From assembly GCF_026571515.1 (NCBI RefSeq), contig NW_026860185.1, positions 124,001-188,000 on the forward strand: a stretch of 64,000 bases of DNA, read 5' to 3'. The notes below the pieces were generated by a model, which worked only from the letters and a program-made list of their open reading frames with translations, had not been told where the DNA came from and made no database searches. Origin of the DNA: Ruditapes philippinarum (lineage: Eukaryota). Position numbers and translations under genes: made by a program. This document shows, piece after piece, positions 1 through 51,831 of the stretch (position 1 is its first letter; the number at the start of each line of letters is the position of its first letter).

Positions 1-192
1 ACATAACTATATACATATAGACATTTTTGTTAAAAAGTATTTTTTGTAAAACTTAATAGTTTTTGCAAATTGAGCATGACGCTTTGAAAGCTTGTGGCCA
101 TAAAATAGAAATACAGTTTTGAAAATTTTGTAGTAAATTCTGTCATTTAAAAGCTTGACACTTTTATTCATTATTTTCTTCTTTCAGCTTAC

Positions 193-3001
193 TGTTCATA
201 AACGGACAGGTCGGCAAATATGAACAATTCTATAATATCATCTGTTGTAGCTCTACCGGTTCTGTGGTGATCTGAAAGATTAAAATAAATAGATTAAAAG
301 TCCAGTTTGAAAATGTTGATTTAAAGAAATTTTGATCAATTTAAATAATGATTAGAAATATTATTTCACACGCGTCTTAGTGTACAATAAATATTTGTAC
401 TTGTCTTCTGTAAATATATTAAGGTTCATAATGTTTATCTAACGATAGTTAAATGATAAATTTTAAATGTTATAAACTAATATGAAAATGCAATAGGTCA
501 CAGTTTACAGAATATGAAAATAACGCATCATGATGTACAAATAGTTAAGCGATAAAGACTTTAACACAATGCACATGTACTTTTTTGATAATTAAAGAAT
601 TGCCATAAAATTAAAACTTTTGTGGAAAAAATATAAAAAGTCGTTACGAATATGCTTATTGATTATCAAAGTTTGGTATTCATTCGGAATCTACGAACAC
701 AGGTTTGGTAATAAATTTATCGCTTAATTTTAAAAGACAATCTTTTTTACTTGACGGACCTTTATCTTCGTTCAGTTCCCGCTTTACACGATGACTTTTG
801 TGACTTCCGCCTTCAGCATGTATAACCATTCTGTTACTATTATGAGTAAATCTACCATACTACAACAGAAGTACTGCTTGAGATAAGTGATCAACAAGTT
901 TCGAGAAGAATAAGCAATTAAATAAAACGACGAACTATTGTGTAAGAAAACCATAATTTAAAGATAACATTTTTAATCAAAGCACCAGTAAAATGGCGGC
1001 CTACAATGAAATTCGTACTTAAACGTCATTAAAAAAACTAAAGCTACATCAAAATTAGAAGACGTATTACAAATTTTGGGCTGAAGTCCGAAGTCTCTCG
1101 ATGGACAACGAGAACGTCTAAGTTGCCAGATTCGTAAGCTGCAAAGTTCTGAAATAAATAAAATGAAAATGGCTTTAAAAAATGTATATGAAATGAAGAG
1201 CAGCTTCCCGATAATAGAACTATATCTGGTGTTTAAATAAAATAATTCAAATGAATAAATCAACTAATAAATATGGTAATTGTGTGTTGAGTAACACAGC
1301 GAACTAAAACAATAAACAAATTATGATTTGTAACTAATATTCAACACTGCTTTGTGCAGCTCTTGTGAACGTACAAACGCACAATATATATACATTGTAC
1401 ATATTTATTTTTGTTAATATTTTAAAAAGGCTGTTTTTCATTTACATTGTTGATTCACAAAAAGCGATTTGTCTTTCTTTGATTTGGCTTTATTTAAGAC
1501 AGTTTTTCATCAATATACGAGATTTACTAGAAAACAATGTCTTAATGGGTAAAATATTTTCAGGGTAACTAGTTCTTTTACTTTATCTAAGAATAAATAC
1601 AAACGTGATCGCTCAAGGGACACTTATTGCTTTATCTGTTAGTGGCCCATTTCTTTCTACATATAATATTAAAAATCTGGATAAAGAGGTTTGATTTCAT
1701 ACAAATTACGAAAAACCACACACTTGCTCTCCAAACAAAACATGCAAGTATTTAAAATAGAGAAAACAAGAATCCTTAAAGAAAGTCCAAAAGGCAAATT
1801 GAAAATGTTCCAGACTCGGTTTGATTGAACCTGTTCATGGACAATACTGCCAAGTGCAAACTACCGTCCATGCCCCCTAGCACAAGCTTAAGATGAATTC
1901 AACATTTAACCATTTAAAGCCACACAGTTTGTATAACTTGAGAAGAAATCTTCCAATCTTGAAGGAAATGTTGTTAAAGCATCGCTAAACTCATGCGACG
2001 TAAAATTCTTATTTATTATCTCTACTCACATCTCTTTCTTTGTCCTTAAATAGCCCTGAAGGGAGGATTTTCGAGGTGTGAAACAGGTCCTCGCTAAGAA
2101 GTTGAGTTGAAACATCATCCTTTTGTAGAAGCAAGGAAACGTCGTTGTCTTGGAAACTAAACACTACTTCAATTCTAGAGGGAAACTTTCCTCTGCCATG
2201 GAAGTCTACATTTTTTATTGTTATTAAATCTGAAAAAGATCTTTCTTATTTGTATTTTTGCATTCAAGTAAACCAAAAGCCCAGGGCATTTTTACAATAT
2301 ACATTGTAGTTAAATGATCGGCCAAGGGACATAGACTTTATGCTAAAATTAAATTCAAATGCTATTAACTTTACTTCTGTAATTACTAAATACTGTGATG
2401 GCTATTGATAAGAATTATATCATTATAGTTCTAGTTATTTGTTTTAGAAAACAAAAACCCATCTTATATCTGTTTACACGGGGATCAATCAATGTTTGGA
2501 ACAAATCAAAACATAAAACAATAGAAACATGTGTTACAACATAGGTAGTTAAATATCATCTTTTCATAAAATAATAATGACCAGAACTATATTACAAAAT
2601 AAAATTACATACAATGTTACATTTTTTGCTGATACAATTTGTAAAAAAAACTTATTTCTTTAACCCGTAGCCTGGACCTGCTGATTTTGTCTTATGGGTT
2701 TTACCCTGCTTTGAATATTTGGAATTCTAGTTGTCTCTTCAAAATTTATGGAATTTTAAAAACAACAACAAAAAGAAACAAAAAACACAAAAAATTGAGT
2801 TACCAACAATACAGAATCTTGTCAGACTGCACGGGTGAGCAGACTGACACGATTTTTAACTGGTGGCCAAGGATTATCAAATTCTGATCCAGTAGGGTCA
2901 TGGTTAATAAGATTTTACTTACAAGATTCATTTTCAGCCGGAATAAACGCACTGCTTCGCACGAGATAAATTATAACTAATTGAAAGAATAAAGTTTCCA
3001 T
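193..3001 (-). CDS. ADAM/ADAMTS-like (M12B) paralog C, 5' part only (signal peptide, prodomain, start of protease-like domain); continues off the left edge
   Basis: Exons 3001-2923, 2229-2030, 1148-1071, 859-760 and 271-193, all GT-AG with phases matching paralogs A and B. Translation: METLFFQLVIIYLVRSSAFIP.. / ..FPSRIEVVFSFQDNDVSLLLQKD.. / NFAAYESGNLDVLVVHRE.. / YGRF..HRVKRE.. / DIIELFIFADLSVYE. Confidence 0.85.
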
Positions 3002-4054: not shown

Positions 4055-7000
4055 TCAATTCCTGTCAATATCTTTAGGTACCAAATTGACTTGCCACTGA
4101 TCTGCAATATCTTGATATACTTCAGCGGTCACGTCAAGTTCTTCATCCTCCCATCCTCTTTTCTCCACGATAATCGTCTGAGGTCCGGCTATAAATTCCG
4201 CATCACAGCCTTCAGGTACAAACCTTTAACATGTTGGTTCAAATAAAACAATTAATCACAAGTTGGTGTCCAGCTACACATTCCACATTCTGTTAATCGG
4301 GTACACACATTAAAAGATTCAACTAAACCAAAAAAAATTAAAGGTTTCTAATGTCCAGCAAAGAAATCCGTAGCTCAAAAACACTTGCCATAAGGTAAAA
4401 AAGAAGCTTCTTTAGTTTAACGTCAAAATAATTACTTTTTTGTCCTATCAATATATCCTAGCATTTTTTAAAAAAATATTCTTTTCTAAAAATTGTGCAT
4501 TTTAGAAAAATTCATCAATGCCGAATGTACTAAGATTATAAACTTGAAACATCTTATTTTTAAGGAACTGTTCTTGTTTTTAATTGTGAAAGACTTATAA
4601 AATGTATGAAAAAAGTAAATACTTTAGGATCTCAAATACAGAACTGAGTATCATGTCAATTGTCTGGAAATAGGAAGACTAGTATTCTATCTATAATGTT
4701 TTAATATTTACATTGTTTCAATAGTGACTGTATCTTTACAACATTCAGATTCCTCTGTACACGACTCAGTCTCGTTAAACGCCGGAAGACCACCTGGACC
4801 GGAGCAACTTGTACACTTATCGTCACAACCACAACCACCACAACACCCACAACCTGCGTGATAAGCAATTGTCTGATATTTTAATAAGTGTTTTATCAGA
4901 GCAAACTTTGAATTATAGCTTGAAAATAAAATTAAATGCATTGCACAATTCGATAAATACCTTAATTTTCATAAAGTTTCTGACACTAAGTATTTATTTG
5001 TACACGAAAGCGGAAAATGAAATAGAAAATTATATTCAAAGAGAAACGGACATAAAATCAGAACATTTCTAGCAGAAAACACCACTTTTGAGTATTTTCT
5101 TATGATTGAAGGGAGATAACCAAAATATTAAAAAGGGAACTTCTCATTTCATAAGGTAAACGTTTGAAATATATTGGACACTTTTATTACATTATATACG
5201 GTATGTAAAATTGGGCATGTATATATACGAACAAAATAAAATCCTCGAATTTGGTCTCTTAAGATAGATACCTGGTAGATCAAATTCCACAAAGCCCGTC
5301 TTTATTACACAATCGGGGTTCGGTTTTTTCGTAGATGACGCCGGCTGAGTTGTCGTCTGCAATTCTGATTTTGGGGATGACGTAGAAGAAGCTGTTGTTG
5401 GAGATGTTGTCTTTCAGGTGGAAACAAAAAATAATGTTGCTATTAAAATGTCTTAAAAAGGACTGCGTGCACTTTTTCTTACTCTTAAAATGTATCTTAA
5501 CCGAGTCCTTACATTGTGTACCATTGTGATATTTGTTTGAAAGTAAATAGTTTGAAATGAGGCATTTATATACGTTACTTAAATATATTTAATCATACAT
5601 TATATGTATTAATTTTCAAATTTTATCCAGCCAACTCGAAATTTAACAAAATCCATAATTTCAAATACATACTCACCGTGGATGTTGAAGTTGAAGATGC
5701 GTTAGAAGACGAAAAGAATAACATAGCTATTTCAAAATCTGTAGTAGTAGAACTTGTAGTGCTGCTTGTCGAACTCGTCGATGTGGAACTGATATTCAAA
5801 CCAGACGCTGCAAAACTAACAACTGCTGAACATACTCCAAACCTACAAATCGGCTGACAGAAATTTTTTTTTATTGAAACTTCATCGAAGCATCATAAAC
5901 AAAATTTTCAGCAACACAAAAGTTGAACGGTCAAGATTGATGTTATTAATTAATCTGTTACTATTTAAATCTATTAACTTATAACAATCTTATTAAATAT
6001 TTATTTATTTATTTATTTACATTCAAGTAAAGCAATGATAATCTTTATAAAATTCATATTGTTTCAGGCCCGTACGTCATTTATAAACAATGAGTTTGTT
6101 GAAATATCATAATTTTTTTTTGTATGCGTACATTATCCTGACTTCTGCTTGAATCGCATGGTGTAAATTGTGGTACAGTAAACGGTGAACATGTGCCTGA
6201 ATCAGTACATCCTTGCGTTGAGCTGTAACAGTCTACTTTATTTCCTTGACTGCCATCCTGATAGGTAGAAAGAAAGAACGTATAATGTTATGCATCAAAG
6301 GTACACCATACTTAAGGTTTATTTACTCCAAGATTATGAAGCCTTTGACTTAGATTTAAATAAGATAGCTCTATTTATATATTCTATGAAGCTTTTGCGA
6401 CCAGAGTTATTCTACTTGGTGGATAAAAAAGGTAAAATTATTATTGTTCTGATAGTTCCAGCATCAAGAAAAGAAATTTACGATCGACAAACTATTTTAA
6501 AGAACAACAACATTTAATTTTCGAACGATTAATCTTTACATGATACCAAAAGCGAAATTAGAAAGTGTCTGGGAATGTATAATATATCTTTCCACGTACA
6601 CAAAATGTCGATCCAGCTTGATAACGGAGCACACATTGTTCGTTCAATGTAAGGAATTCGCTGATATATGAGGATTCATCAAATGCTTGAAAGTCAAAGG
6701 TGGCGTCCTGTATTTTAAGGCAGCTAAGATCCATCCCTCCGTCACTTTATATAGAAAAGATATGTGTTTGTAAATTACCTTCAAGTTGGGCAAGTTTAAA
6801 TTTTTGTGCTTCACATATAAACTTTTAAAACAAATGAAAAATTACGCTGGTTACTTTTTACAAATGCAGTTTATGCAACAATATACATGTATGACATATT
6901 CCAGTTTGATGGATTTACATCGCTTTCAATTAATTTAAAATGAGATGCTTGACAAAACGTTATTATAAAAGAACTTACAAGGCATTTTTGAAATTGTTAA

Positions 7001-10000
7001 TGCTGCATTCAGAGAACTTCCATCGGTTGCCTTGTTTTGAAGAATGTGTAACTGGGCCATATGCTGGTGACATAATAAACTGATCAATGCTGCTACAATC
7101 GTTACCTTCACCATCAAAGGGGACCGACAAACTAAAATATTGATTGGAACCTTTATATGCCACTAAAGTTTAACTCATGTCGATTGTGGAACAAGCCTAC
7201 ACCATCTACAATGTTTTTGATGAGTGATAAATTGTAAAGAAGTCCTTAGTGTAAATAATTCAGAAACAGAAATAAAGCATGACACCGGTCTTAAAGAAAG
7301 AAAGAAATTTAATGCATTTTGAATCATTTCAAAGTTAATCATAACTATAACATGAACTGTATTATTACTGTAAATAAAGTTTTCATATTTGAAATTCATC
7401 ATTTAAAGTATTTTAGGTACAATTTCAGAGAAACAATAATGTAAGGCCATACGTTAGAGCGATCCCTTGCGCCATTGTGACCGGAAAATTATCAATTCGG
7501 ACTATCGAAGTTGCCAAATCTGTGCGACTACCGCATATTTTTCCAGTCGAAATAACTGTTATGATAAATACAATAATATAATCAATTCTGTTTATTTTTA
7601 TATGAAATGAATGATAAAGAATACACAACAAGATTACAATAAGTTATACAAAGTATATCCATCGGAAATGTACATGCAGCCTAATTGGTGGTGCGGGATA
7701 CATATCAACATAATTATAGAAGTTTGTTTTGCAAAAAGATACATGTAATTTAGAAATTCGCGATATATAATTTTTCAGACAATATCTTTGTATATTTACG
7801 ATTATATTACTCTTCGAACAGAACAGAAAACCAAAACTACAACTACATAATTTTATTGCATTAAAACAACATGTTCCACAGCAATAAGAACAATAAGAAT
7901 ATGGAAAGTGTAAGTTTGGTAAAAATTACGTAGGCCTTTACCTTGCAAATCTCCTTCAATGTTTAATCTGAAAAAAAAAGAAATATATGAAATAAATTAT
8001 ATGTATTCTAAAAGAAAATATTAAAATGTTAGAATTTATAAGGACACTCAAGAATGACAAAGTTGCTATCTATATAAATAATGAATCTTTATATTCATAC
8101 TAACAACCAAAACAATGCGAAGGCATCTTAGTCCTATACTTTTAATTTATTGAAAACCTTCAAGATCATTTTGTCTAGCTAAATGTTGTATGCATACAAA
8201 CAACAATTAAATGTTTTTTATGCCGCCTGTTTCTTTTTAGAAACACATCGTATATATTTTTGTAATCTGAATACGAACTTGTTGCTGGCTTTCTGAAAAA
8301 ATATGGAAAGGACGGGAGAGAAAGACAACTTTTTACTTTGTTATAGCCACCAGATGATCTGTGATCGGAAATGCAAATCTTGTTATGAGTTTGTCGTAAT
8401 ATGACTGAAGATCACTGACGGCTGCAGACTGTAACCTATTGTTAGAAACGTTGTTTTCGACCCATTTCTGTTGATTCGAATGCTGAAGAAATAAACAGAG
8501 CTAACGTGATCAGAAAGACGACAAAAGTAAAATCGAAAAATAAACAAGATTTTCACACATTGTTATGTATGGTAAATGTTTTATATAATAAACTTTTATT
8601 CAATTTTATGAATAAATCGATAAGATCAAAATTATCATTTCCTTACTCTTGTGAAACACTTGCATATACTTCCCCGCTTTTAGTTTATAGTTAGATGTTT
8701 TCCAATGTTTTGAGCCAGATATTTGTGATGAATTTACAAGCAATGAATGTAAAAGCAAACGAATCATGCCATTACATTTATATATCACATACAACAAAAG
8801 CTTGGTCACTGAGTTACTGCTGTAGTTATCGGTCTTGCAGATCTTACATTGATATAAACATGTATGTGTCGATTTAAAACACCCTCTGGTGTAAGTTTTC
8901 TACACATTTAGAATGTACTGTTAGCTATTGTGTCAGGTTTTACTTGAAATTTTGATAAACACCCACTATAGTAGGTAAATCGTTTATGAATATGGTTGAA
9001 TACATAAGTAAAAGTATATAACGTATATAATGACCCGTGTTTATCAGATCTATTTTGAGAAACATAAAAAGATATTGATCAAAATCCCTGCAGGGTGTCA
9101 TTTATTTGTAATGTCCGTAAAACTTGTTAATACATTTAAGGTGTTGATCTTATCGACCATTTATGTCACGATATTCATAATAATATTATATAATATAATA
9201 AATATGTACCTTCCAATGAATCTTACATTTGACTTAAGTGTATAATTCTAATATGAAATATATGAGCCGCGCCATGACAAAACCAACATAATGGAGAATC
9301 CAGATCAGCCTGCGCATCCGCGCAGTTTGATCAGGTTCCATGCTGTTCGCTGTCAGTTTCTCTACTTATTATAGGGTTTGTAAGCGAACAGCATGGATTC
9401 TGATCAGACTGCGCGGATGCGCAGGCTTGTCTGGATCCATGCTGGTCGCAAACGCATTATGTTGGTTTTGTCACAGCGCGGCTCATATGCATATAAATGC
9501 GTTTTACTTTCATGTTTAATTGTAATTTATCAATAAATGACATCATATAGTTTTGATAATATATGAATGTAACAATATGTTGAAAGTGAGTAATATTATT
9601 ATTCGATGTCCGTCATTGTATTGTAATGTATTGTGTAATGTATTGTATTTCTGAGAATGTTGTAATTTTTATTTTGTGTCAGGTCAAGGGCTTATTAGCC
9701 TAAACCAGACTGTTGTTGTTTACATGTGGATTTTGAAATAAAATTCTTCTTCTTATGACCAAGAAATGTGGTAAAATCGGTGTTAAACACAGAAATTCAA
9801 ACAATGGTTCTTTATTAAGTGGCTGGATAAATTGGAACTTGGGTGTGATTAGAAAAAAACAAAAACAAAATTTTTTTTTATAAGTATCTGCAAGTGTTCT
9901 ATCTTTTTATTTGAGATATTCATTTTTGTTTTGTTTTGCATCTTTGTGCTCTTCATTCTTGATATCTTTTAATTATCTTACCGTAATAGTTTGATATTGT

Positions 10001-13000
10001 TGAAGGTATATTCTCATCGTCCTGTTAGTTCCGAAAACACCGAGGTACTGGTAAATTGTGTCAACCTCAAAAGAACATAGATTTAGAAACTGTAAAGATA
10101 TACTATGCTTATACTTGACTAAAATATTTTTTATAACAGAAATTTATTGAAATCTGTGAAAGTCTTACTTAATATGTCTAATTTGAATAAAGGAATGAAT
10201 ACACTATGTATGGGAAGCTGTGTTATCTACTACAGGTCAAGTTGTTCTTATCATAAAGCACTGCCAGTTTTCTAATGCCGCTATATATTTATATTGTGAC
10301 CACCTTTGGTGTGTAAATTTTTAAGCTTTGGGTGAAGTCAAAACATTATTTTATATTAAAAAGAGACTGTATAGCAATTATCAATATTTCCAAATATCAA
10401 ATTTGAGCAGTATAGAAATATATAGTCAATTCATAGTAAGAATGTAGATTAAACATATCTATTGGATTTTAAAATCGTTCAATTACGCTGTCGTAACTAC
10501 GATTAGAATAAAAGTATTTGGAAACTACATGAACATACCCTTATATAGCATTAATTAAAATCAAATTATTTCTGCTAGATACTGGATAAGTTTATTTACG
10601 CATCTTACTTTGTAAATGCTTATGAATATAAAATTATTATTATGTAAAAAAAACTATCTTTGGTGGTAAGAAAATTCTGAAATTTGTATAAATACCTCCT
10701 TTGCTATGGCTTTTAAATAAGTTCTAAGGAACTTCTTTATATCATCTGCTGTTTTGTCTGGCATTAGTTCGTCTCGCACACTGTAAAATGGTTGATGTTA
10801 ATCATTATAAAGTTTTTGACATAACTGTACAGTTAATATTTATTCGAGATTTGTGTATAGTAAGATGTAGGTCTGGACCTTGTGTGTATAATTACACATC
10901 ATTAACCCGCTCTGTTTTTTTTTCAGAATATTAATTTCAACTCGAAAATGAAAAGCGTTCAAACACTTCTATCTAAAATCTACGGAAGAGCAATAGCGGC
11001 AGGTGTGTGTATTTTATTAACTCGAAATTTGGAGTTATTTACTTAAAATTTCGACTAACTAACCCGAAATTTTGACTTATTAACTCGGAATTTCGATTTA
11101 ATACCTCGAAATTGTGACTTAGTAACTCGAAATTTCGACTTAGTAACACGAAATTTCGACTTAGGAACTCGAAATGTCGACTTAGTAACTCGACATGTCG
11201 ACTTAAGAACTCGAAATGTCGACTTAGTAACTCGAAATGTCGACTTAGAAACACGAAATGTCGACTTAGTAACTCGAAAGCAACTTTGGCAATCGCACTC
11301 CCTATTATATCTTTTATTTTCTAAACTCTTAGTAACTGATAACTTTTTCGGCCATTCTAGTAATGTAACTAAGTCGAAATTTCGAGTTACTAAGTAAGCT
11401 TTATTAACTTCTTGCAGATTTATTTAAAATCTTAGATGTAGTAGTTTAGGCTAGATATATCATTTCACAGATTTGAGTAGAGTTGTTGTTGTGTTGATTT
11501 ATCTTAAAATCTGTCTAATAAATCAAGAACTTACTGTTGATAGACAGAGAGATCAGCAAATATAAACAGCTCTAATATGTCGTCGGCGGTATCATTTCTG
11601 TTCTTGTTAATGGCATCTAACGTTATGAAGAGAAAACATATATGAAGAGTTATAGGTGAAATGTATTAGATTTAAGTGAAAACATTAGAGAAGTTGTAAG
11701 AGGCCTATAAAGTTGAAGTGTCTTATATACTTAAGGACAATGAAAACGCACGGCCGGGATAATTGCATTTTAACAAGGAAAATATATTTCTTTTAAATAT
11801 TTTTTCACAGTTTCATAAAACCGAATGCATTTCGGTCATTTAGATACCAAAGTTATGAAAAATGATTGCATTTTAATGAAGTTATTGCATGATAAAGACA
11901 GTACCCGAAAAATCAAAAGTAACACTTTTGGCTAATTGTGATAAGATCACAACAGATAACAGATTTAATCAATTCATGGTTACTTTATGAAATGAAATTA
12001 TTTATTTTTTTTAAACTGTTAATTATTAACCTGTTTTTCACACCTTTCTAGAAATGTTAGACACAAATTAGCAATTAAATTTTTTAATGAAAATGAATAT
12101 TAAACTATGCCAATTGTAATTTTTAGAAATCGTAAAAGCTTACATTGAAAATGCATATACACACTTTTCCTCTATTAAAGGTGCTTAATTTCAAACAATA
12201 CTGAAGATTTGCTAGCAAATTGTATGCAATGGTTCAACAAAGAATTAACGGCTGGGTAGATTTAGGACAGATTCAGCCTGGTCTATCTTACAATCAAATT
12301 TTGTATTATCAAAGCGCAAACCGTTTTGCTGTCCATCGGTCTACAATTTCTCGGCTTCACCAGTTTCACCACTACACTACAGGCCGAATGGCGTCAGATT
12401 CTACAGACGACTATCCGCACCGTAAGGTCTATGAGGCGACGATGTACATCTGTAAGAGACGCTGACGTAGGACATTGTCGTTTCTAAAGATCCCGACGGT
12501 GACATTACGAATATAAATTTATGAGTGATTTTGTTTGGGATTTTCATTTTGGGTTTTGCCTTTGTTAAGTTTGCATTACTATGATGAAAAAGTGTGATTT
12601 TGGGATTTTCACCAAAGGTTTTTCGATTTACTGGTGTACATTTGATTTTAAACATTTTGAATTATTTTCAGCTGTTAAGTTTGCTTTTTGTATTGAAGTT
12701 ATGATATATATCTAATGGAGTCGTTAGTGTTTTGTTTTCATGTAATTAGATGCATATAGTGCGGGCGTGCGTTTTCATTGTCCTTAAGTATATTACTTAT
12801 GATAATTATTTGATAATGTAATATTTCTAAATTAAAAAATCTTATCATGTTTCTATTTAGTTTTTTGAAACACGATTCATTCAGAATACAGTGTTTTTCA
12901 GGTATTCTGATACATTTCGAATATATAAAACATTTAAATACATATTATTTGTCGCATTTTCTTCATGTCTGTATATAAAGATTTTCTTATTTATTTGATC

Positions 13001-15358
13001 TTTCAGGTTTGTACCATTTCATATACCGTACAGATTAAGCTAGCACCGAGCGTATGCAATGTTCAATGGTGTCTAACAAGATGAGATTTTTATTTAAAAA
13101 TTCAATTTTTCTTGCTCTCAAGGGATTCGTACTTTTCAGAACTTTAATTTGAAGAGTACCTGTTTGGCTCAAATCTCGTCTTACGTGATGATTGTCATGG
13201 CTTCCGTCCTGAGAAAATATCACCAGTTTTTCCTTGTTGCTTGTAAATCTACCATACTATAATAAATGGTATTCGTTGATGTTATTTGGTATTTCTGAAT
13301 TTGTAGACAAAAATTGATTACTTGTAAAATGAAATTTTATTTTTGTCAAGTGATATAGTTACTACACTTATATCAATTGAATGAGTCATTTAAGAGTATA
13401 ATAACATTTCCAAAACATATTTACTGAAACGCACATATGAACTTATGAACATATCAACTTTTTCAATACTGTTAAAATCAATCTTGAAGAAGCCCCTTTA
13501 AATTACACAGATCACCAAGTACGTTCAATTATTAACTTAATGGCAATAATAAGCAAATTCATTCTGCCAAAAACATCTATGTTGCTTAGAAAGAGTAAAC
13601 ATTGCTATTTAAACAAAGTGATAAAACAAAACTTTTTTACAAATTTTGGCAAAGCATCTGAAGATTCTCTATGAACAATCAAAATATCAGAATTTCCAGA
13701 ATCATACGCTGCAAAATTCTGAAAAAGAAACAATAGCTGTATCAAACAATATAACTATGCCAGATATATAAAACAGGTTATAACTACGTATTACAGCTTA
13801 TTTCAAGTAATGTTGTCATCTTTGAACATAATGTGTTTTTTTAATAACTTCACTTCAAATAGTCAAAATATAAGTGTGACAAAAACAAGCAGCAAACAAT
13901 ATTTACATTTATTTGAATACAATGCTTTTTGTATTGGGTTTTACGTCGAACAAACACAGAAGAGGTCATATGGCAACTTTGCAGCTTCACTGGTGGTGTG
14001 AGATCTCAAATGCTCAATTATTTCAGGCACGAATGGGGACCTGAGTATAACCACCGTCGTTCCGCAAGCTAGCTGGAAAACTTTCTTACATGAAAGAATC
14101 CAAAGTCACTGGCGGATTCAAACCAATAGCTGTTAGGGGCTAATGGTGATTACTTTATAAAATATGCTTCATCATAAAACAAAAATAGCTCACATTTCTT
14201 TTGTCTTCTTTGAAGAGCCCAGAGGGAAGAATATTTGAGGTTTGAAACAAGTCCTCACTAAGAATATCAGTGGTCTCGCTATCTTTATTTAGCCTCAAGT
14301 AAATGTTGTTGTCATTATGATTCAAATGAACATCTATAACATCCGGAAATCTTCTGTTTCCATGGTAATACACATTCTCTACTACTACTAAATCTAATGA
14401 GATATAAACATGTGGTAACCTTTATATTATTTGTTTAAATGTAAAGTTAATTTGCATTTTTTTAATTGAATAATTTATTATGGTACAAATAAAACAACAA
14501 ATGACCGTTTATTTACACAATGTACACACAATACTTATACAATTTTAATTCCAAATATTATGGTTTGATACAAGGATGACTTAAATCTCCTTAAAAGAAA
14601 ATGATCTTTTTCCTCAGATTTCCGGATTACAGATGTACTGATAAAATCACGATAATATTTTGTACATTTGTTCATGTTGTTATGAGCCATTTATTTCTTG
14701 TAGGGAAGAATATTTAGGTTATAAACAAACTAATATTATTTGTCATTTTGTATAAGAAAGGTACAATGTATTGATTTTTTTGCAGAAATGCACAAATATC
14801 CTTTTTCGATTCTGTTTATTAGATATCAGTCTTCCGCCAGTCTTTCAATAAGTAAATAACTATCATAATGTAACCTGAATACAAAGATTTTCAAAACTAG
14901 TATATGCACAATGCCAAAAAAAAAAATGATACAAAGAGCATAATAGATTCATTCCTTTTAATTATTTAAGAATAGTTAATTACTTACACTTACTGAAATT
15001 AATTTAAGATATATTTCATAGGCAAGCTACCAGTTTTGTTACAATTCTTGATAAAGAAATGCTGCTATTGATTTAATTGATACAGAAAAGGTGACATAAG
15101 TCCCAGTCATGCCACGTTATTAGTATATGATGATAGAATGTCATTTAAATGTGGTAAAAAGGATATGTACGGTTACATTATTCTTATATACACATACTTA
15201 TCTCCAATTATATGACTGACAAAGATGAAACTGTTTAGAATAGAAGGAGAAATCTATAAATTTCTTTCAGCAAGGTGATATGATTTACCTGTCAATATCT
15301 CCCCAATAACTGAACAATATCCCAATGCTTCTATAACTAGAATTATACCGTAAAACAT
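4055..15358 (-). CDS. Secreted ADAM/ADAMTS-like (M12B reprolysin) pseudoprotease paralog A, 17 exons, about 673 aa
   Basis: Exons 15358-15289, 14393-14194, 13718-13641, 13256-13160, 11616-11535, 10780-10696, 10065-9982, 8482-8337, 7967-7942, 7555-7453, 7131-6979, 6744-6600, 6257-6132, 5853-5677, 5410-5272, 4853-4712 and 4223-4055. All GT-AG; they join in frame (2022 nt) to TGA. Signal-like N-terminus MFYGIILVIEALGYCSVIG, reprolysin landmarks (LELFIFAD, DHLVAIT, GKIC, Met-turn FIMSP, WKFSECS, SCL), ADAMTS-type Cys-rich module (NEQCVLRYQAGSTFC..CRFGVC), S/T linker and Cys-rich tail. Confidence 0.88.
9261..9487. mobile_element. Palindromic MITE, family 1, copy 1
   Basis: TATGAGCCGCGCCATGACAAAACCAACATAATG at the left end, its reverse complement at the right end, and a largely self-complementary interior. 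Same family at 40680 and 45882. Confidence 0.85.
11018..11395. repeat. 21-bp minisatellite (GACTTAGTAACTCGAAAT[GT]TC) with a short inverted copy
   Basis: About 12 degenerate tandem units at 11018-11280 and a reverse-complement copy near 11367-11395. Confidence 0.85.
11730..12788 (+). mobile_element. Non-autonomous Tc1-like DNA transposon
   Basis: TA-flanked TIRs CTTAAGGACAATGAAAACGCACG ... CGTGCGTTTTCATTGTCCTTAAG. The interior encodes a decayed Tc1-type N-terminal HTH (ANRFAVHRSTISRL..YTTG) near 12310-12420. Confidence 0.75.
13925..14150 (-). mobile_element. tRNA-derived V-domain SINE (RUDI/BivaV-like), degenerate
   Basis: The reverse strand reads ..CATGTAAGAAAGTTTTCCAGCTAGCTTGCGGAACGACGGTGGTTATACTCAGGT..AAAGTTGCCATATGACC..GACGTAAAACCCAA, resembling the V-SINE core and tail as I recall them; not database-checked. 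Confidence 0.6.
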
Positions 15359-18875: not shown

Positions 18876-19185
18876 TTACTTCTTCTCCACCAGTTCTACC
18901 TTCCATTTACCGGAATCATTTTTGAACACTTCTGCAGTTATTTCTTTTTTATTTTTATCTTCAGGCATTGTGATAATTCTTCTTGGTCCAGATTCGTACT
19001 GCGAGGCACAACTCTCGTGAACATATCTGATAAAACATTAAATAACATGATTTCAAGTTCATTTTGCTATATCTTTGGTAAATATGCATTGCATTGATAA
19101 CAAAGCTTTGGTTTTTGTAGCAGACCAAGGGTCAATTACGTTACCTTTTTTCGGGTTACAACAAAAAAAATTTTTTTTCTTTTTC

Positions 19186-19243
<58 letters not shown>

Positions 19244-19528
19244 GTTGTTGTATTGATCATAAAAGTTCACTGAACGTACATATGCTAATAAGACTTTAGT
19301 TAATTGAATAGATAAAATTATACTTACGTTGTTGTAACTCGGACTTTCTTGCCAAAACAATGAGCACCTTGCTCACAATCCTTGTTGTTCTTATCACAAC
19401 CTGCACACGTACATCCTGTAATATATATAATTATAATTCGGTATGTTAAATCAGAACTAAATAATTGTCAACATCTGTCACGTTTGTACATAGTACTGAA
19501 GTCCGATCCATTGAGGCAACGGTCAACG

Positions 19529-19607
<79 letters not shown>

Positions 19608-21082
19608 AATAATGAAAGAAACTAAATGAACGTGTATCGCATTCACAACAATTAGAACGACAACTTATGATTCAACAGTCTGAGTGGAATTTAAGTGACA
19701 TGTTTATTACAAAGTACACTTTTTGTTTAAATATTAAAAAGTTAGTAAAGTACAAAATACCTGGTACATCGTAATCTTTAACTTTTGTTTTCAACACACA
19801 TGAAAACGGTTGTGTTGTCGTCTGAAGATCACTGAAAGAAGTCGTAGACTCCGTTGATGATTCTTTACAAAATCCAAACTGACAAGTTAACTGTGAAGAC
19901 AAACATTGTGTTAACTGTTTAAAACCTAGTACCTATGACCTACATATAAAACCAGTATAGAACCCGGTCAACCTGCACATCTGTGAATTCTGACCACATG
20001 CAATAGTCTTGTCCGATTCATATACAAACGTATGTACATGTATATCAATTTACCCGGTAATATTGGAATTTTACGTAATCATTACAGCTCGTTACGCGGA
20101 GACACACACCAAAATAATTCAAAACATCATCGTATTTCTACAAAAGAAACTACTTCCTAGGGATCACCCTTCTTCTATATTTTGAAATTATTCGACATAG
20201 AAGAAAAGAAACAAGAGCTGTCCGTAAGACAGCGCGCTCGACTTTTTTATTGCTTACCAATAAAAAAAGTTTTTGCAGTAAAAGGCAATACAAGAATCTC
20301 TGTATTTTTAAAGTGAACAATGGCCATGAGCATTAAGATATTTAGTGAAGAATTATTTTACTGAATTGTGTGATACCCTTGAACACTGCAGCAAAGTTTG
20401 AAATGTTTAAGTCAAAACATTGACAGTTAAGGGCCATAATTCAAATAAAATCTTTGACAGAATTACCTTCTCCTGGACATGTTTGGGAATCATGATTGTA
20501 AACAAGTATTCCAACTTTCAAATTAATATCTCAAACAGTTCAGTCAAAAAGTGGACTGGTACTAAAAACTTAACCAAGATTCTAAGTCGATAAAAGGCCT
20601 TAATTTTTAAAACAAATCCTTGACAGAGTTACCTTCTCTTGCGTACAGATGGGGGTAATGATGTGAAATAGCATTAAAAGTTTCAAAGCAATATCTCAAA
20701 GGGTTAAGGCAATAAGTGGATTTTACCCATATTCAATGTATTTTCTAAGTCAAAAAGGGGCATAATTCTGTCAAAAACCTTGACAGAGTTATGTCCTCTT
20801 GTCTGTTGATGAAGGTCGTGATGGTAAACAAGTATGGTCAGTTTCAAAGCAATACCTCCAATGGTTTTGAAATAAAGTGAGGTGGTACAAAAAACTTAAC
20901 CAAGCTCAATACACTTTCTAAGTCAAAAAAGGGCCATAATTCTGTCAAAAACCTTGACAGAGTTATGTACTCTTGTCTGTAGATGGAGGTTATGATGGTG
21001 AACAAGTATGGTAAGTTTCAAAGTCATACTTGTAATACTTCTGAAATAAAGTGGGGTGGTACGAAAAACTTAACCAAGGTGT

Positions 21083-21114
<32 letters not shown>

Positions 21115-24100
21115 GGCGAGTAGGATAGCTCCCCTTTTCATAGAAAAGTCGAGCTAAAAAGTTGACGCTCATATTATCTAAAGTGTATTAATAAAATTAA
21201 TGAAATAATAAATCAGATGAATAATTAATACAATTATATACGAGGGGAAGTCAGAAAATATCCGGACTTTTGACTCGTTCTCGAAAACCATTCAACATTT
21301 TAAAAAAAAATCTTTCTACTCTTTCTCCACCTACGTCTACGCACCTTTGCCATCTTCGTGGGAGCTTTTGTATTCCCGCTGTGAACCATGACTTTGGGTA
21401 GTGTGTACAGCAGATATCAAAGCCGCCCTGGTCTTATATTTCTTTCCAGCATGCAATTTTTTCAGTTCTGGAAACAAATAAACGTCACAGGGGGGCGAGG
21501 TCTGGGCTATAAGGAGGGTGAGACAACAATTGCCATTTGTAAGAGTTGATAACCTCCACTGTAGCTGCGTCGGTATGGGAGGGGGCGTTATCGTGAAGAA
21601 GGAGGACATTTTTATGTGCTAACCTGGGACGCATTTGCTTCAGCTTTTCTCTGAGATTTTTCAGAATTACCTCTGAGATTTTTCAGAATTACAATTTGTA
21701 CTTCAGAATAGTACTTGGCGGCGACAGTTTGACCTTTTGGCATGAAATGAGTAAGTATCATTCCTCGTGAATCCCAAAAGGCAACAAGCATGACTTTGCC
21801 AGATAAAGGAGACAGCTTAAATTTTTAGGAGGTGGGGAACCAGCTCGTTTCCACAACTGAGCTTTTGTCTCAGGTTCGGAATAATGACTCCAGTGATAAT
21901 GCGGTTCAAAAACTTATCTCCTTCACGATTAAAACGACTTAAATGTTCTTTTGCATTGGTTACTCTGGTTACCGTTTGATCTGCGGACAGCTGTCTAGGC
22001 ACCCACCTGGCACTTACCTTGATCATGCCTAGGTGTTCGTGTAAAATATTGTGTGCTGATGCCTTACCGATGCTAAACTTGTTTGCTACCTCCTCCAAAG
22101 TTACTCGACGATTTTGTTGACAAAAGCTTTAACATTTGCTACCATTGTTGGGGTCACCGCCTCAGCTGGCCGCCAGTCCTAGGCCTGTAACAAGTACTTG
22201 TTCTTCCTTCACGAAACTGAGAAACCCAGTTGTAGAAGGTTGAACGTGATGCTCATTTATCAGAAAATCTTTTTAAGCCTCTGAAATATGTGGCAGGGCT
22301 TTTCACCTTCTGCAACCAGAAACTTTATTAAAGAGCATTGTTCCTCTAACAAAGAGTCCATGATAGACGAAACACCTATCATATATCACAGGGCAAAATA
22401 CTGTGTATACACAACTATCATTGAAAATAAACTGACCACGTTATTGGCGAATGAATGTAGTTTTCACCAATATATAATGTGTGTATATAGCTGCACGTAG
22501 AAAGAGAGGAGCATGAAAAGTCCGGATATTTTCTGACCGTCCCTCGTATAACGCTGTCTGTCTTACCCCCTTTGTATTCCCACATGATGTCCTATGTGAC
22601 ACAGTAAATGGTTCACACACACCATTGACTAGGCAGCCCTGTGTTGCACTGTAGCAATCAACCATATTTTGATTGCTATTATCCTAGAAATATAACACTT
22701 CAATGCGCATGTGTAATAATTAAAGACACATGCGCACTGTAAATAAAATCATTATAATAAATTCATCATATTTAACAGTGTGTTCAAACTTGGTTTCTGT
22801 TTTGACAACAAATTTGAAACTTCTTCAAAATTTATCGGTCCAATGAGCATTAGAGGAATACTTGTATATACATATATTGGTACAACCGGTACCGTCGGCC
22901 TAGTGGTTAAGGCGTCAGCCTTCGGATTGTGAGGTCGAAGGTCCGAGACCCACGTGGAGCGTTAATTGAGGAATTAATGTTTCTCGTCGAACTCATTCTG
23001 AAATGGCCGCTTCGTGAGCAGCAAGGTAGTTAAAATGAATGTTTACCATTTTCTATCCGCCTGGCGCCTGGCATAGTGGTAGCAGTTGGGGTAAAAGGTA
23101 TACAAGCAAAAGGTGTCTTATAAGTCAGAAATGGCTGGCCCTTTCAGTAGGGGAGACACTATAATAAACAAACCCTTTACCCTTTTTCCTTTTATATTCT
23201 TAAATATTTACAGTTTTATATTAGTTTTAAATAAGAATTAAAAACCTGTAGAAAGAACGGTTTAATAAAACATTATATTCAAAATATTACATACGCAAAA
23301 TGTAGCCCCACTTTGGTAACGTATTTCGCATTGTTGATCAGCAGATATTTCTTCACTCATAAAAGGGGCATTGTTAAACTTTTCCCAGTCGTAATACTTA
23401 TCCTCTGTTTGAAGACAACTTAGGTCTAATCCGCCATTACTTTAAAAATAAAAATGCTAAAATCGTAACAGAAAAGTACCTTAAATATTCATAAATAATG
23501 TATCTATGATTTACGAACAGTAAATGTATGCTAGATTATTAGCATAGTTTCCGTGTGTTTATTATTAATGAATTGTTTCAGTAAAAGTTTACATACATGT
23601 AGAACAAATTAGATTTTGAAATCCAGCACAACCTTTACTTAAATATCTTACCTATATAAAGATGTTTCATTTAAAACCTTATATTTATTTTAAACAATAT
23701 GGTCAAGGGAACTTTATTTTTGCTAAAACTAAATATTTTTGTCTTATTAATAAAAAAATTTGATAGATGCTAAATATTTATGCGGATCGCTTCCATTCTT
23801 TCGACCACAGATTAAATTGCAGCAAATATTTAGTTTTGGTCGCACACTTGTGTATAATTTGGCTTGAAAAGATTAATCAGTTATGAAACTATTGTGTCAG
23901 TACCAAACCATTGAAATAGCAAATCTAATTTTTTTTTTTTTTTTCATATTTGGCTAAAACACCTTCAACATTATTTAAATTTCAAACGAATCAACTTTTA
24001 ATCGGTAAATAAAACAAATTGACATATTTGGCCATGAAGTAAATAACTAACGTAACGTAACAATCCAAGAATTCGACTTTTTTCATTATACGTACATCGC

Positions 24101-27100
24101 AGCTTGGAACTTTTCTACGCTACATGTTGAGAATAACCATCTGTTCCCTTGTATTGATGGGTCTGTCACAACACTATAATCACTGGACATGATGTATTGA
24201 TCATTAATTTCACAACTGTTTGATGAACCATCGAAATTTACCCCGAATCTTAACCAAAAAACAAAAGATGTCTGTTATGCAACCAAAGTTTTATTTCCCA
24301 TCGTATATTTCTCAATATCATTTAACTTTATTTTTACAATAAAAGATTTCACTGTCTATATTCGCGAGAATGTGAAAGTCTTAGCTGCCATATACTTATT
24401 CGTTTGTTTCAGTTTGAATTACTTTAAGATTTCTTGCCATGTTGCTCGTCTTGGCAATATATTGCTCAGCTTCGGTGTTGCTATTGCACAGCTCCTGCGA
24501 TAGTTTCACATTCCTGCGTTATGGATATACACAGTGGGTATACCATTTTTCTGCACAAGAATATCTGTAAACTGTTTTTCAGAATAAAAAAGAGTAGCAC
24601 GATGGTCTCAGCCGTATATTCTTTTCTGGCTTTAACATTACGCCTATAGTTTAAGATGTATGTAAAAAAAGAAACGTCAGTTTTATATCTAGGGAGAATA
24701 ATTACTATGGCTGTTGTATCTTACTGAAATACGTAAATGTACAGTATATCTATTAGTTCGATAAATGTGTTTGTGGTTTCGCCTGAGGTTTCTCGTCGGG
24801 ATCTGCTAATGAATTGATTTTTAACATGATTATTTGTCTGCGGTTAGCGAGGTTATATATTTGCTATTACTGTGTCATATAAACTTTACTGACACTTTTG
24901 ACAGGTTAATTTGGCTTTCGTTTGTAACTTTGATATTAATGTAACATTATAACTTAGATTTCATTTGTGACATAATCTTTTTTTTCCGTCTGATAATATG
25001 TCCTGGATGTCGTTTATGACATGAAAAGTTCGACTGCTGTAATATGATAACATCTATCTATCTATCTCTGGATACTGCCAACCCCTCTTACGAGTGTTAA
25101 AGGCAGGAATTTAGTGCACGTCGGATTGTTAGTAAAAGGTAAAAAGAAAAGCTAAAAAAGAAAAGTCCAAACATTGACATGCTTGGAAGGCGAGACTGAA
25201 AATGTATTCTAGTCATGGTTAAAATGTTAATAGTGAAACAAGATGATAAGAGATAAAATAGTTTAAAAACACTGGGAGTAAGACTAGTACTGCAAACCCA
25301 CCACTGCCTGTTTGAACTGACTCAGGTTAGGCAGGGTGGCAATGTTACTAGGAAGTTTATTCCATAGTATAATGCTATGAGGGAAGAAAGAGTACTTATG
25401 GTAGTCAGAGGATACCTGTAATTGGCGTAGAGATAAGGGATGCATATGTCTGGTTAATCTATGTGGGGTTTGAACATAAGTTGGGAGATTAATTGCAACT
25501 AGGTTGTGGTATATCTTAAAACATTATCAGTCTACAGTCCAATCTGCGATGTTCAAGGGGTCGCCAGCCCAGTTCTTCCTGCATGGCTGTGACACTAGAG
25601 TGAGGGGAGTAATCCCTTTTAACCCATCTTATTGCGCGTCTCTGGATCATCTCAACTTTGTCAATATTGGTTTTAGTGTAAGGAGACCAAATAGTTGAGG
25701 CATATTCAACCTGTGGGCGGACCAGGGACTTGTATGCTAGTTCTTTCACTTTCTCATTTTTTAGTAATGACATTTCTTTTAATAAAGCCAAGGGATCTGT
25801 TTGCATTGGAAGTTATTCGAGATATATGTGTATTGAATTTAAGGTCAGCAGATAGATCTAGTCCGAGATATTTAGCATTTGTAACAGACTCTAGGACTTG
25901 GCCATGGAGCATATATTTGTGTTTAATTATGGTTTTATTTTTGGTGATAATGACAATATTTTCTGGACATAATAATAAGTTAATCATTACCTTTGTTATC
26001 AAATGTATCATTATATATCATGCATCGTCATGATAACATATAAGACATATTTACTTTTTCAAAATTTAGTAATGTGTAAGTAAAATTGGTTACGTCCGAG
26101 CTATCGCTTGAGACATGGCAACTTGAAAGTGGTCAATACGAACAATAGATGCCGCCACATTTGCTGTCTCCCCACACATGCTGCCAGCTGTCATTACTAT
26201 ATTGTATAAAATAGTTAATTAGAGCTAGTTTGTCAATTCTATAAGGATCATAAGCCTATGGGGCAATACATACAAAGCTTATAAATCCACACATAAAAAT
26301 GATCATGAAAAGATAGTACGTACAATTGAGTATAACATAATTTATACTAAGTTTATGTACTTCGGAAGGCTGAAACTCAAATTTAACCAAAGAAAAATAT
26401 ATAAAAGAAAAACACTTCAAAATAAACATATGAATGACTTGAAAACGTGCATTTGTACCCCAAATTACAGGCGATCTTTATTGCAATCAGTACAAAAATG
26501 TCAACTTACTACATGTAGCTATAACCTTAGTGCACGAATTCTCTGACAATTATTGTTAATAAACAACAGAACAGAATGTGTAGTTATAAAACTGTATGGG
26601 GAGAATTGCTATTGACGATATTTAGTCCTACTCACACATTCATAAAATTTAACGACATAGATTATTAAAAATATGCTTGAAGTAAATAAAAGTATTAAAT
26701 ACATGTTGGCATGTTGTGGAAGCGTAAGTTTGGCAAAAGTTTGATATGTGTAAATCATAAAGATTTTACCTTGGTCTCCGTCTGCCATTTGTAACCTAAA
26801 AACAGTTCATTATTTAATTTGATTAATTTATTTATGGTAAAATGATTATAAAATTGTACTGCTTAAGTTACATTAAATAAATATGTAAAAAATATTTTGC
26901 AGTCGGCCTAAAAACCAAGCATTATACAGTTTCATTAACCTTTTTAACAGAATTGTTGTAAATTTCATCAAACATTGTTCATAAATTAGGATTATAAACG
27001 GAAAACCCCACGGTAACACTAAAGTTCGTATACGAATTTTAACATGCAAATGAAGACTATAATCAGTTCGTGTATGTGCTACGTCACGGTGTTATAGTTG

Positions 27101-30100: not shown

Positions 30101-30671
30101 AAAACATAAGTCTAAGTATTATTCTGTATAAAAATGTAATTTGAAATTAATACATACTTCTTTGACAACGCATGGTAGCCACTTTTTGATGTAGGGATAC
30201 ACTTTCGATGAGGCCATCATCTCGTTTTCAAAACTAGAAAAACAAAATAAATGAAAGAAGTCCCGAAAGAAGGAGAATATAAATGTATTTATATGCACAT
30301 GCCTGTAACAATATGCAACTGATCTCAAAAGAAAATCTTCTAGAATTATAAATATAGGAAAGTATTTCAAAGACGGACATTGGCTAATTTTTGTTTCGTT
30401 ATTTCTTAAATACATGTACAGTTTGTTTTTACTTATATAGGCGATTAAACATTTATAAACAAACAAACAAACAAATGAAAAGACATGATTTCAGTATGTT
30501 TTAGAACACTTACTGTTGATGAACAGATAAGTCCGTAAACAAAAATAACTCTATGACGTCATTTGGAGTCGATACATCTCGGCGAACTCTGTGCTTTACT
30601 TAGAAGATAGAAAGTGCAAAAAATGAGAATAATAGAAAATAGAAACAAACAATTATCAATGTATTCCTTTG

Positions 30672-30705
<34 letters not shown>

Positions 30706-33504: not shown

Positions 33505-33669
33505 NNNNNNNNNNNNNNNNNNNNNNNNNNNNNNNNNNNNNNNNNNNNNNNNNNNNNNNNNNNNNNNNNNNNNNNNNNNNNNNNNNNNNNNNNNNNNNNN
33601 NNNNNNNNNNNNNNNNNNNNNNNNNNNNNNNNNNNNNNNNNNNNNNNNNNNNNNNNNNNNNNNNNNNNN
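33505..33669. other. Assembly gap (165 N)
   Basis: Run of N characters. Confidence 1.

Positions 33670-51799: not shown

Positions 51800-51831
<32 letters not shown>

What the first reader, a model, noticed from the sequence alone, without database searches (positions are those of the whole stretch)
6979..7555. Paralog A: all four catalytic residues of the metzincin motif are replaced
Seen: across the exon 10/11 junction the sequence reads TMA-QGIALTLSVPFD-G where the canonical motif is TxA-HExGHxLGxxHD-G, so H>Q, E>G, H>L and H>F. The downstream DG, Cys, Met-turn (FIMSP) and W.FS.CS are retained. Established: HExxHxxGxxH supplies the three Zn ligands and the general base. Inference: a zinc-free pseudoprotease that keeps the fold as a binding scaffold, decoy or inhibitor.
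Basis: partly seen in the sequence, partly recalled or inferred. Interest (0 to 1): 0.85.

Follow-up and report, generated by a model that had tools for sequence, protein, structure and literature searches.

The report
Catalytically dead ADAMTS-like clam gene
A Manila clam gene encodes a relative of ADAMTS-type zinc proteases in which all four catalytic residues are replaced, yet selection has kept the rest of the protein, so it is one more 'dead enzyme' retained for a non-catalytic job.

Summary
On the minus strand, exon 10 (7555-7453) ends TMAQGIAL-T. Exon 11 (7131-6979) continues LSVPFDGEGNDC...FIMSP...WKFSECS. The residues at the canonical HExxHxxGxxHD positions are Q, G, L and F.

The genome is Ruditapes philippinarum. 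Gene A is an intact 17-exon, 673-codon ORF. It is one of three tandem paralogs (A, B, C), with a fourth truncated copy (D) on another contig. All four share the dead site and form one strongly supported clade among about 18 intact HELGH...HD paralogs.

Synonymous sites between A and B are saturated (pS 0.745) while pN is 0.33. An HMM built from 47 intact molluscan relatives aligns colinearly across A's whole catalytic and disintegrin-like region. The Met-turn, nine cysteines and other structural residues are kept. No alternative HExxH exon exists in the locus.

My conclusion is that A is a selected, probably secreted, zinc-free M12B pseudopeptidase of ADAMTS type. It follows the same substitution pattern as the known dead ADAMs. 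It is a new member of a known kind, of moderate-low interest. The scan flagged a similar dead-site locus elsewhere in this genome.

The parts
7453..7555 (-). Gene A exon 10. It encodes the strand, the conserved Cys and the pseudo-active-site helix ...TMAQGIAL(T). Q is at 7469-7467 (first His position), G at 7466-7464 (Glu position) and L at 7457-7455 (second His position).
7132..7452 (-). Intron 10, GT...AG, phase 2. It splits the motif 2 nt after the second-His-position codon, the same place and phase as in the intact paralogs.
6979..7131 (-). Gene A exon 11: LSVPFDGEGNDC...FIMSP...WKFSECS. F is at 7118-7116 (third His position), the retained Asp at 7115-7113 and the Met-turn Met at 7073-7071.
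   Evidence: (Reprolysin_2, E 0.011, below cut-off)
15289..15358 (-). Gene A exon 1 (tentative): ATG, a hydrophobic signal-peptide-like stretch and a phase-1 GTAAAT donor. B and C have analogous candidates at 32852-32783 and 3001-2923.
   Evidence: Inferred from hydrophobicity and phase only; no conservation was detectable.
13160..14393 (-). Gene A exons 2-4 (14393-14194, 13718-13641, 13256-13160): the pro-domain, ending in a dibasic HHVRR site. B has RVRR and C has RVKR.
7942..11616 (-). Gene A exons 5-9 (11616-11535, 10780-10696, 10065-9982, 8482-8337, 7967-7942): the N-terminal two thirds of the catalytic-like domain, including the retained DH..T strand.
6132..6744 (-). Gene A exons 12-13 (6744-6600, 6257-6132): the end of the catalytic-like domain (...SCL) and the ADAMTS-type disintegrin-like/Cys-rich module.
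   Evidence: (PF17771 in relatives; 18.9 bits in P0157)
4055..5853 (-). Gene A exons 14-17 (5853-5677, 5410-5272, 4853-4712, 4223-4055 including the stop): a Ser/Thr-rich linker, a Cys-rich knob (CGCCGGCGC...) and a ~55-residue C-terminal module. There is no transmembrane stretch.
18876..32852 (-). Paralog B: 16 exons, a 581-codon open frame, and the same intron phases as A. Its dead site AMSQAIAR(T)|FGVNFDG lies in exons at 26196-26094 and 24248-24096.
1..3001 (-). The 5' part of paralog C (exons 1-5 are in the window; the rest lies left of it at G000:C8672:117160-124000). Its dead site is SMAQGIAL(T)|FNVPLDG. Exon 8 is missing or degenerate.

Best explanation
Gene A (window 15358-4055, minus strand) is a maintained, probably secreted, catalytically dead homologue of the molluscan ADAMTS-type M12B metalloproteases, that is, a pseudopeptidase.

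Shown:
- The three zinc-ligand histidines and the general-base glutamate are replaced by Q, L, F and G.
- The replacement happened before the A/B/C/D duplications.
- Since then the whole ORF has evolved under purifying selection, the pseudo-active-site helix included.
- The structural framework of the domain is kept: Met-turn, the Asp after the third His, the DH..T strand, nine cysteines and the disintegrin-like module.

Inferred:
- Hydrophobic or aromatic side chains (L/R/F at the second His position, F/L at the third) fill the former metal site, as in the dead ADAMs.
- The protein is made with a signal peptide and a pro-domain, and carries an O-glycosylated Ser/Thr-rich stalk.
- It acts by binding a ligand rather than cleaving it, as a scaffold, adhesive or substrate-trap (decoy) relative to its roughly 18 active paralogs, through the surfaces of the catalytic-like and disintegrin-like domains.
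For: Sequence and splice sites.

Intron position: the same place and phase inside the motif as in 10 intact paralogs.

Public model: RefSeq's model of paralog C has the same junction.

Site state in relatives: 54 full-length relatives are HExxH...HD, whereas A-D are not.

Domain retention: an HMM of 47 intact relatives scores A at 138 bits over residues 145-473, colinearly, and B at 151 bits.

Conserved columns: A keeps 30 of 48, and all four catalytic columns are replaced.

Phylogeny: A-D are one clade with 100% SH-aLRT support on a long stem.

Selection:
- A-B has pN 0.33 against pS 0.745 (saturated), with dN/dS about 0.12; regional values where dS is estimable are 0.12-0.29. A-C values are similar.
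- Within MAQGIALT, A and C differ at 5 of 8 codons, all synonymously.
- In a neutral simulation the ORF closes in 99.95% of copies at only 0.1 substitutions per site.

No other HExxH-coding stretch in family context exists in the locus.

Family: the intact relatives carry PF01421/PF13688 plus PF17771 and are nearest to solved ADAMTS-1, -5 and -4.

Precedent: the known dead ADAMs show the same substitution pattern with a retained Met-turn (PMC11266112, Table 2).
Against:
- Two searches that could have returned a public protein for A or B found none. The current annotation may therefore not call them as coding, although the second search used a weak profile.
- Two of the four clade members are incomplete: C lacks exon 8 and D has only exons 10-16. 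The clade is therefore partly decaying.
- Direct Pfam support for the clade is below cut-off: Reprolysin_2 at 16.1 bits on exon 11, PF01421 at 18.5 bits on D, and none on C.
- Exon 1 and the signal peptide are tentative.
- Fold retention was not shown by a structural model.
Confidence: 0.7

Rival explanations
1. A is a non-functional pseudogene, a relic of a duplicated protease gene, and the dead site is simply decay.
For: No public protein for A or B was retrieved. No RNA evidence could be obtained. Sister copies C and D are incomplete.
Against: - A has 17 exons, all with GT-AG, and an open 673-codon frame. B's 581-codon frame is equally open.
- Synonymous sites between A and B are saturated while pN is 0.33.
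- Neutral simulations lose the ORF at 0.1 substitutions per site.
- The dead helix itself shows only synonymous changes between A and C.
- The loss predates the duplications, so the genes survived a long time after it.
Confidence: 0.12
2. A is still a hydrolase that uses another metal site or a different catalytic mechanism.
For: The Asp after the third-His position, the Met-turn and the cleft-forming framework are retained. ADAMDEC1 is said to tolerate one altered ligand (from my own knowledge, not checked here).
Against: All three His residues and the Glu are replaced by Q, L, F and G, none of which is a good zinc ligand or base. No compensating His, Asp or Glu appears in the helix. The residues at the second and third His positions vary among the paralogs (L/R/L/F and F/F/L/L), which is not what a conserved alternative site would show.
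Confidence: 0.04
3. An intact catalytic exon exists and is used alternatively, so the dead exon pair is only one isoform.
For: None found.
Against: A six-frame scan of locus A (3900-15600) for H[ED]xxH finds one match on the gene strand. It is SHDNHH in the pro-domain exon 4, not in motif context. About 0.74 matches are expected by chance. B and the in-window part of C have none in context.
Confidence: 0.02

Closest known systems
Catalytically inactive ADAMs (ADAM2, 11, 18, 22, 23, 32; C. elegans UNC-71), the M12B pseudopeptidases reviewed in PMC11266112
   Same: Same peptidase family (M12B) and the same kind of degeneration. The first His becomes Q. The second His becomes L in ADAM2, 18 and 32. 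The third His becomes an aromatic or hydrophobic residue. The Met-turn is retained and the following Asp often is too. Compare ADAM2 QLLSLSMGITYD with clam A QGIALTLSVPFD. These proteins are retained under selection and work by protein-protein binding.
   Different: The clam proteins are ADAMTS-type rather than ADAM-type. In relatives the disintegrin-like module is PF17771. No PF00200 disintegrin, ADAM_CR, EGF, transmembrane segment or cytoplasmic tail was found. The C-terminus is a Ser/Thr-rich linker, a Cys knob and a small unknown module. The loss is independent and so far seen only in venerid clams.
ADAMTS proteases (ADAMTS-1, -4 and -5 catalytic plus disintegrin-like structures 2jih/3q2g, 2rjq, 2rjp)
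   Same: These are the nearest solved structures to the intact relatives. The order of pro-domain, catalytic domain and disintegrin-like domain is shared, and the proteins are secreted.
   Different: No thrombospondin type-1 repeat, Cys-rich/spacer or PLAC domain was detected, and the zinc site is absent. The hits for 'catalytically inactive ADAMTS' whose titles and abstracts I read appear to concern engineered enzymes, not natural genes.
MIG-17-like secreted ADAM/ADAMTS-like proteins (C. elegans) and the expanded molluscan 'Peptidase M12B domain-containing' proteins (e.g. P0003, P0077, P0020)
   Same: The pro-domain, M12B and ADAMTS-type disintegrin-like architecture without TSP1 repeats. Some members carry Ser-rich mucin-like regions (P0020 also has a SEA domain). 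The intron inside the zinc motif is shared with the clam's intact paralogs.
   Different: Those proteins have intact HExxHxxGxxHD. The A-D clade sits on a very long stem branch, with a stem length of 3.6 substitutions per column, and has a different C-terminus.
ADAMTSL proteins and papilin
   Same: Non-catalytic members of the ADAMTS superfamily that act in the extracellular matrix by binding (from my own knowledge).
   Different: ADAMTSLs lack the pro-domain and catalytic domain altogether and consist of TSP1 repeats and ancillary domains. The clam proteins are the converse: they keep the catalytic-like domain and have no TSP1 repeats.

Membership tests
M12B (adamalysin/reprolysin) peptidase family, by homology of the catalytic domain | Significant sequence similarity across the catalytic domain | tested here: met
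   The link runs through intermediate sequences. An HMM of 47 intact molluscan relatives, which themselves hit PF01421/PF13688/PF13582, scores the locally joined A model at 138 bits (E 1.7e-38 at Z = 1e6) over residues 145-473. The exon 11 profile finds those relatives at up to 56 bits. Direct Pfam hits are sub-threshold.
M12B peptidase family, active peptidase | Zinc-binding consensus HExxHxxGxxHD (three His ligands and a Glu base) | tested here: not met
   The site is Q, G, L, F in A; Q, A, R, F in B; Q, G, L, L in C; and K, G, F, L in D.
Metzincin clan | Conserved Met-turn beneath the metal site | tested here: met
   The Met in FIMSP (7073-7071) aligns with the column that is 100% Met in intact relatives. 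It is retained in A-D.
ADAMTS in the strict sense | ADAMTS-type disintegrin-like module after the catalytic domain (PF17771) | tested here: inconclusive
   The match is strong in intact relatives (47-62 bits). Within the clade, only the Mercenaria member P0157 hits, at 18.9 bits against a cut-off of 27.3. The HMM alignment is colinear with the Cys pattern kept.
ADAMTS in the strict sense | At least one thrombospondin type-1 repeat, plus Cys-rich and spacer domains | tested here: not met
   No TSP1 or spacer family was reported for A's exons 13-17 or for P0001, P0029, P0157 or P0003.
ADAM (including dead ADAMs) | Disintegrin (PF00200), ADAM Cys-rich, EGF, transmembrane and cytoplasmic tail | tested here: not met
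   None of these families was found. The C-terminal exon ends without a hydrophobic stretch.
MIG-17-like | C-terminal PLAC domain | tested here: not met
   No PLAC hit for A's C-terminal exons or for P0001/P0029. Instead there is a Ser/Thr linker, a Cys knob and an unknown ~55-residue module.
Functional (selected) pseudoenzyme rather than pseudogene | Open frame, intact splice sites, dN/dS well below 1 after the loss of catalytic residues | tested here: met
Functional (selected) pseudoenzyme rather than pseudogene | Transcribed and translated | not testable with these tools

The most novel reading that the evidence does not exclude
A-D would be the first described natural ADAMTS-type pseudopeptidases: a venerid-clam lineage that kept the pro-domain, the catalytic-like domain and the disintegrin-like domain for a very long time after plugging the zinc site with hydrophobic residues. 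The dead head sits on a mucin-like stalk. It would act as a substrate-trap or decoy (or a TIMP sink) that tunes the clam's large set of active paralogs in mucus, haemolymph or shell matrix.
Probability: 0.3. Interest if true: 0.5.

Novelty: new member of a known kind. Interest (0 to 1): 0.3.

Why it matters
Pseudoenzymes are common and M12B already has well-studied dead members, so the principle is not new.

The case still adds three things:
- It is a clean, datable example in the ADAMTS-type branch, where the review I read lists none.
- Intact and dead paralogs sit side by side in one genome. There are at least three independent losses among the sequences compared: the A-D clade, an intronless clam copy, and a Lymnaea gene whose sister is intact.
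- The substitution pattern is convergent with mammalian dead ADAMs (Q at the first His position, hydrophobic or aromatic residues at the other ligand positions, Met-turn kept).

Together these make it a useful natural experiment on what a metzincin fold needs once the metal is gone. The protein is also a candidate non-catalytic extracellular component in a commercially important bivalve.

Tried and rejected
- Pfam on single exons of A gave only a sub-threshold Reprolysin_2 hit on exon 11. PF01421 searched over the whole genome does not hit the window.
- Public proteins for A or B were sought with P0001 and with an alignment headed by a 728-aa relative. Neither was found. The second profile was weak (its own first sequence scored 89 bits), so this is not proof of absence.
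- A search with the Mercenaria C-terminal protein P0157 returned only P0157 itself and P0001. Ser/Thr-rich words probably saturated the candidate list.
- Structure: the spliced model of A has no reference, so I did not send it to structure prediction, Pfam or the large protein searches. It was used only inside local scripts. Folding the public partial protein P0001 with an alignment of exon references gave mean pLDDT 49.5. The fold search gave only Z <= 3. Both are uninformative, and they are not evidence against the fold.
- The profile of exon 11 alone does not reach any solved structure.
- tblastx found no conserved exon 1 among A, B and C. The exon 1 candidates rest on hydrophobicity and phase only.
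I redid the step with coordinates only.
- I considered and rejected an assembly or sequencing artefact, because four paralogs and a RefSeq model share the state. I also rejected a recent inactivation, because synonymous sites are saturated.
Full report
**What is there.** The window is G000:C8672:124001-188000 of a 1.4-Gb, 30% GC genome. The genome is Ruditapes philippinarum. A protein predicted from this same 198,368-bp contig is RefSeq XP_060606868.1 (P0001).

Exon 10 is AG|7555...7453|GTATGG and exon 11 is TTTTAG|7131...6979|GTAAGT. The spliced reading is ...IDNFPVTMAQGIAL-T-LSVPFDGEGNDCSSIDQFIMSP...WKFSECS. At the positions of HExxHxxGxxHD the gene has Q, G, L and F. The Asp after the third His, the Met-turn and the W.FS.CS block are kept.

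**Gene models.** tblastx of the locus against the rest of the window and against the DNA to its left shows three tandem minus-strand paralogs:
- A, at 15358-4055
- B, at 32852-18876
- C, from 3001 leftwards to about C8672:117160

For each gene I chained the conserved blocks, requiring GT-AG introns, consistent phase and an open frame.
- A has 17 exons and 673 codons with no internal stop.
- B has 16 exons and 581 codons. A's exons 14 and 15 are one exon in B, and the Ser/Thr linker is shorter.
- C is open in every exon found. Its exon 8 survives only as a degenerate remnant with a stop, and skipping a 146-nt exon would shift the frame.

My 3' model of C contains RefSeq P0001 exactly. That validates the method, including the junction inside the dead motif. 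Exon 1 (the signal peptide) is tentative in all three genes.

The joined models were built and used only in local scripts. Database tools received single exons by reference. For the same reason I left out Pfam, large-database and AlphaFold runs on the joined protein.

**Family.** The genome holds about 24 matches to exon 11. Most of them read ...AAHELGH | ...LGAxHDG.... In 10 of them the intron sits 2 nt after the second-His codon, in phase 2, exactly as in A and B. The replaced residues are therefore positionally homologous to the ligands.

A profile of exon 11 from A, B and C, searched against 1.84 billion representative proteins, finds 187 proteins. The full-length hits are molluscan proteins of 500-1300 aa. 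Of the hits, 54 carry all four residues. The ones I scanned hit Reprolysin families plus ADAMTS_CR_2, and the one I compared with solved structures (P0003) is nearest to ADAMTS-1, -5 and -4.

No TSP1, PLAC, ADAM-type disintegrin, EGF or transmembrane element is found in the clade. It is therefore ADAMTS-type by descent, but neither an ADAMTS in the strict sense nor an ADAM.

An HMM built locally from 47 intact relatives aligns colinearly with A over residues 145-473 (138 bits) and with B (151 bits). That span covers the whole catalytic-like and disintegrin-like region.

**The loss is selective and old.**
- Of 48 columns at least 80% conserved in the intact set, A keeps 30. The retained ones include nine Cys, DH..T, the Asp after the third His, the Met-turn Met and W.FS.CS. 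All four catalytic columns, each 100% invariant in the intact set, are replaced in A, B, C and D.
- D is a fourth member on contig C10466 (RefSeq XP_060556994.1, P0029). It has only exons 10-16 and shares A's Cys-rich knob.
- A-D form one clade with 100% SH-aLRT support on a long stem. They are separate from two other losses: an intronless 898-codon clam ORF (L037, ATQQIARALGTRDD), and Lymnaea P0042, whose sister P0077 is intact.
- A Mercenaria protein (P0157) matches the clade-specific C-terminal half. A 55-aa fragment from an unnamed public assembly (P0002) has F at the third-His position. The clade is therefore at least as old as the venerid genera sampled.

**Gene or pseudogene?**
- Between A and B, pS is 0.745 (saturated) and pN is 0.33, giving dN/dS of about 0.12. 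In the regions where dS can be estimated the values are 0.12-0.29. A against C is similar.
- In simulated neutral evolution of A's CDS the frame closes in 99.95% of copies at 0.1 substitutions per site, and in all copies at 0.2 or more.
- Inside MAQGIALT, A and C differ at 5 of 8 codons, all synonymously.
- The scan for another H[ED]xxH-coding stretch finds only SHDNHH in the pro-domain exon.

Both complete copies have therefore been maintained by selection after losing catalysis. What I could not show is expression.

**How it probably works.** Without three His and the Glu, zinc-dependent hydrolysis is excluded on established metzincin chemistry. The replacements are Q at the first His position, L, R or F at the second, and F or L at the third, with the Met-turn kept. 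They mirror the known dead ADAMs, for example ADAM2 QLLSLSMGITYD, ADAM18 QLLGLNVGLTYD and ADAM32 QMLALSLGISYD (PMC11266112, Table 2). Those proteins act through binding surfaces of the pseudopeptidase and disintegrin domains.

By analogy, and from the architecture, I infer a secreted, glycosylated, non-catalytic binding protein. The architecture is a candidate signal peptide, a pro-domain with a dibasic site, a dead head, a disintegrin-like module, a Ser/Thr-rich stalk, a Cys knob and a small C-terminal module. The ligand is unknown. Whether it acts as scaffold, adhesive or decoy is also unknown.

Reprolysin-domain proteins have been reported in bivalve shell-matrix proteomes (PMC5854119). That suggests where to look but is not evidence for this gene.

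**Novelty and score.** Dead M12B homologues are a known kind. The review I read lists no ADAMTS-type example. The hits for 'catalytically inactive ADAMTS' whose titles and abstracts I read appear to concern engineered enzymes rather than natural genes.

I file this as a new member of a known kind, with interest 0.3. The scan also noted a similar dead-site locus on other DNA of this genome (s1-811381), which fits the independent losses seen here.

The assembly gap at 33505-33669 was left untouched.

Noticed in passing
G000:C8672 about 122150-123270 (left of the window; window coordinates -730 to -1850): Paralog C has no functional exon 8. Only a short degenerate remnant with a stop lies between exons 7 and 9. 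RefSeq's model for C (XP_060606868.1) accordingly starts at a Met inside the 26-nt exon 9. An in-frame cryptic acceptor inside exon 9 could join exon 7 directly, but nothing supports its use.
   Followed up: partly
L046-L048 (G000:C10466:36352-43120, + strand): Paralog D (RefSeq XP_060556994.1, P0029) holds only exons 10-16 of the family. No exons 2-9 are detectable in the 19 kb upstream. Its dead site reads SIAKGIAFSLGAKLDE and its Cys knob is closest to A's.
   Followed up: partly
L037:46-2739 (-) and L036:384-2318 (+): An intronless 898-codon ORF, present in two near-identical copies on different contigs, belongs to the same family. It hits PF01421 and PF17771 and has an independently dead site (ATQQIARALGTRDD) followed by a long Ser/Thr-rich tail. 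It looks like a retrocopy that stayed open.
   Followed up: partly
P0042 versus P0077 (Lymnaea stagnalis): A gastropod pair shows a further independent loss. P0042 reads AARELGQSLSADYD, while its close sister P0077 keeps AAHELGHSLSADHD.
   Followed up: no
window 11042-11423: A tandem repeat inside intron 5 of gene A is open in several frames on both strands (RNFELLSRHFE-like units). It is not part of the coding chain.
   Followed up: no
window 9250-9503, 40678-40936, 45870-46065: An interspersed repeat of about 250 bp occurs in both orientations. One copy lies in intron 7 of gene A and the others lie downstream in the window.
   Followed up: no
window about 47000-52200 and 58000-64000, + strand: Two tandem multi-exon genes of the AMP-binding (acyl-CoA synthetase / luciferase-like) type, seen as exon ORFs such as ...[11 protein letters not shown]... 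at 62575-62808. They are unrelated to the finding.
   Followed up: no
window 4055-5410 (exons 15-17 of A): The C-terminal ~100 residues (after the Ser/Thr linker) are the only part of the P0001 model predicted with confidence (pLDDT 75-87): a small mixed beta/alpha module. No fold match reached Z above 3. It is conserved in Mercenaria P0157.
   Followed up: partly
window 13160-13256, 30514-30598: The pro-domain cleavage-type site differs among the paralogs. It is HHVRR in A (exon 4) and RVKR in C (exon 4). In B, RVRR is encoded at the start of exon 5.
   Followed up: no
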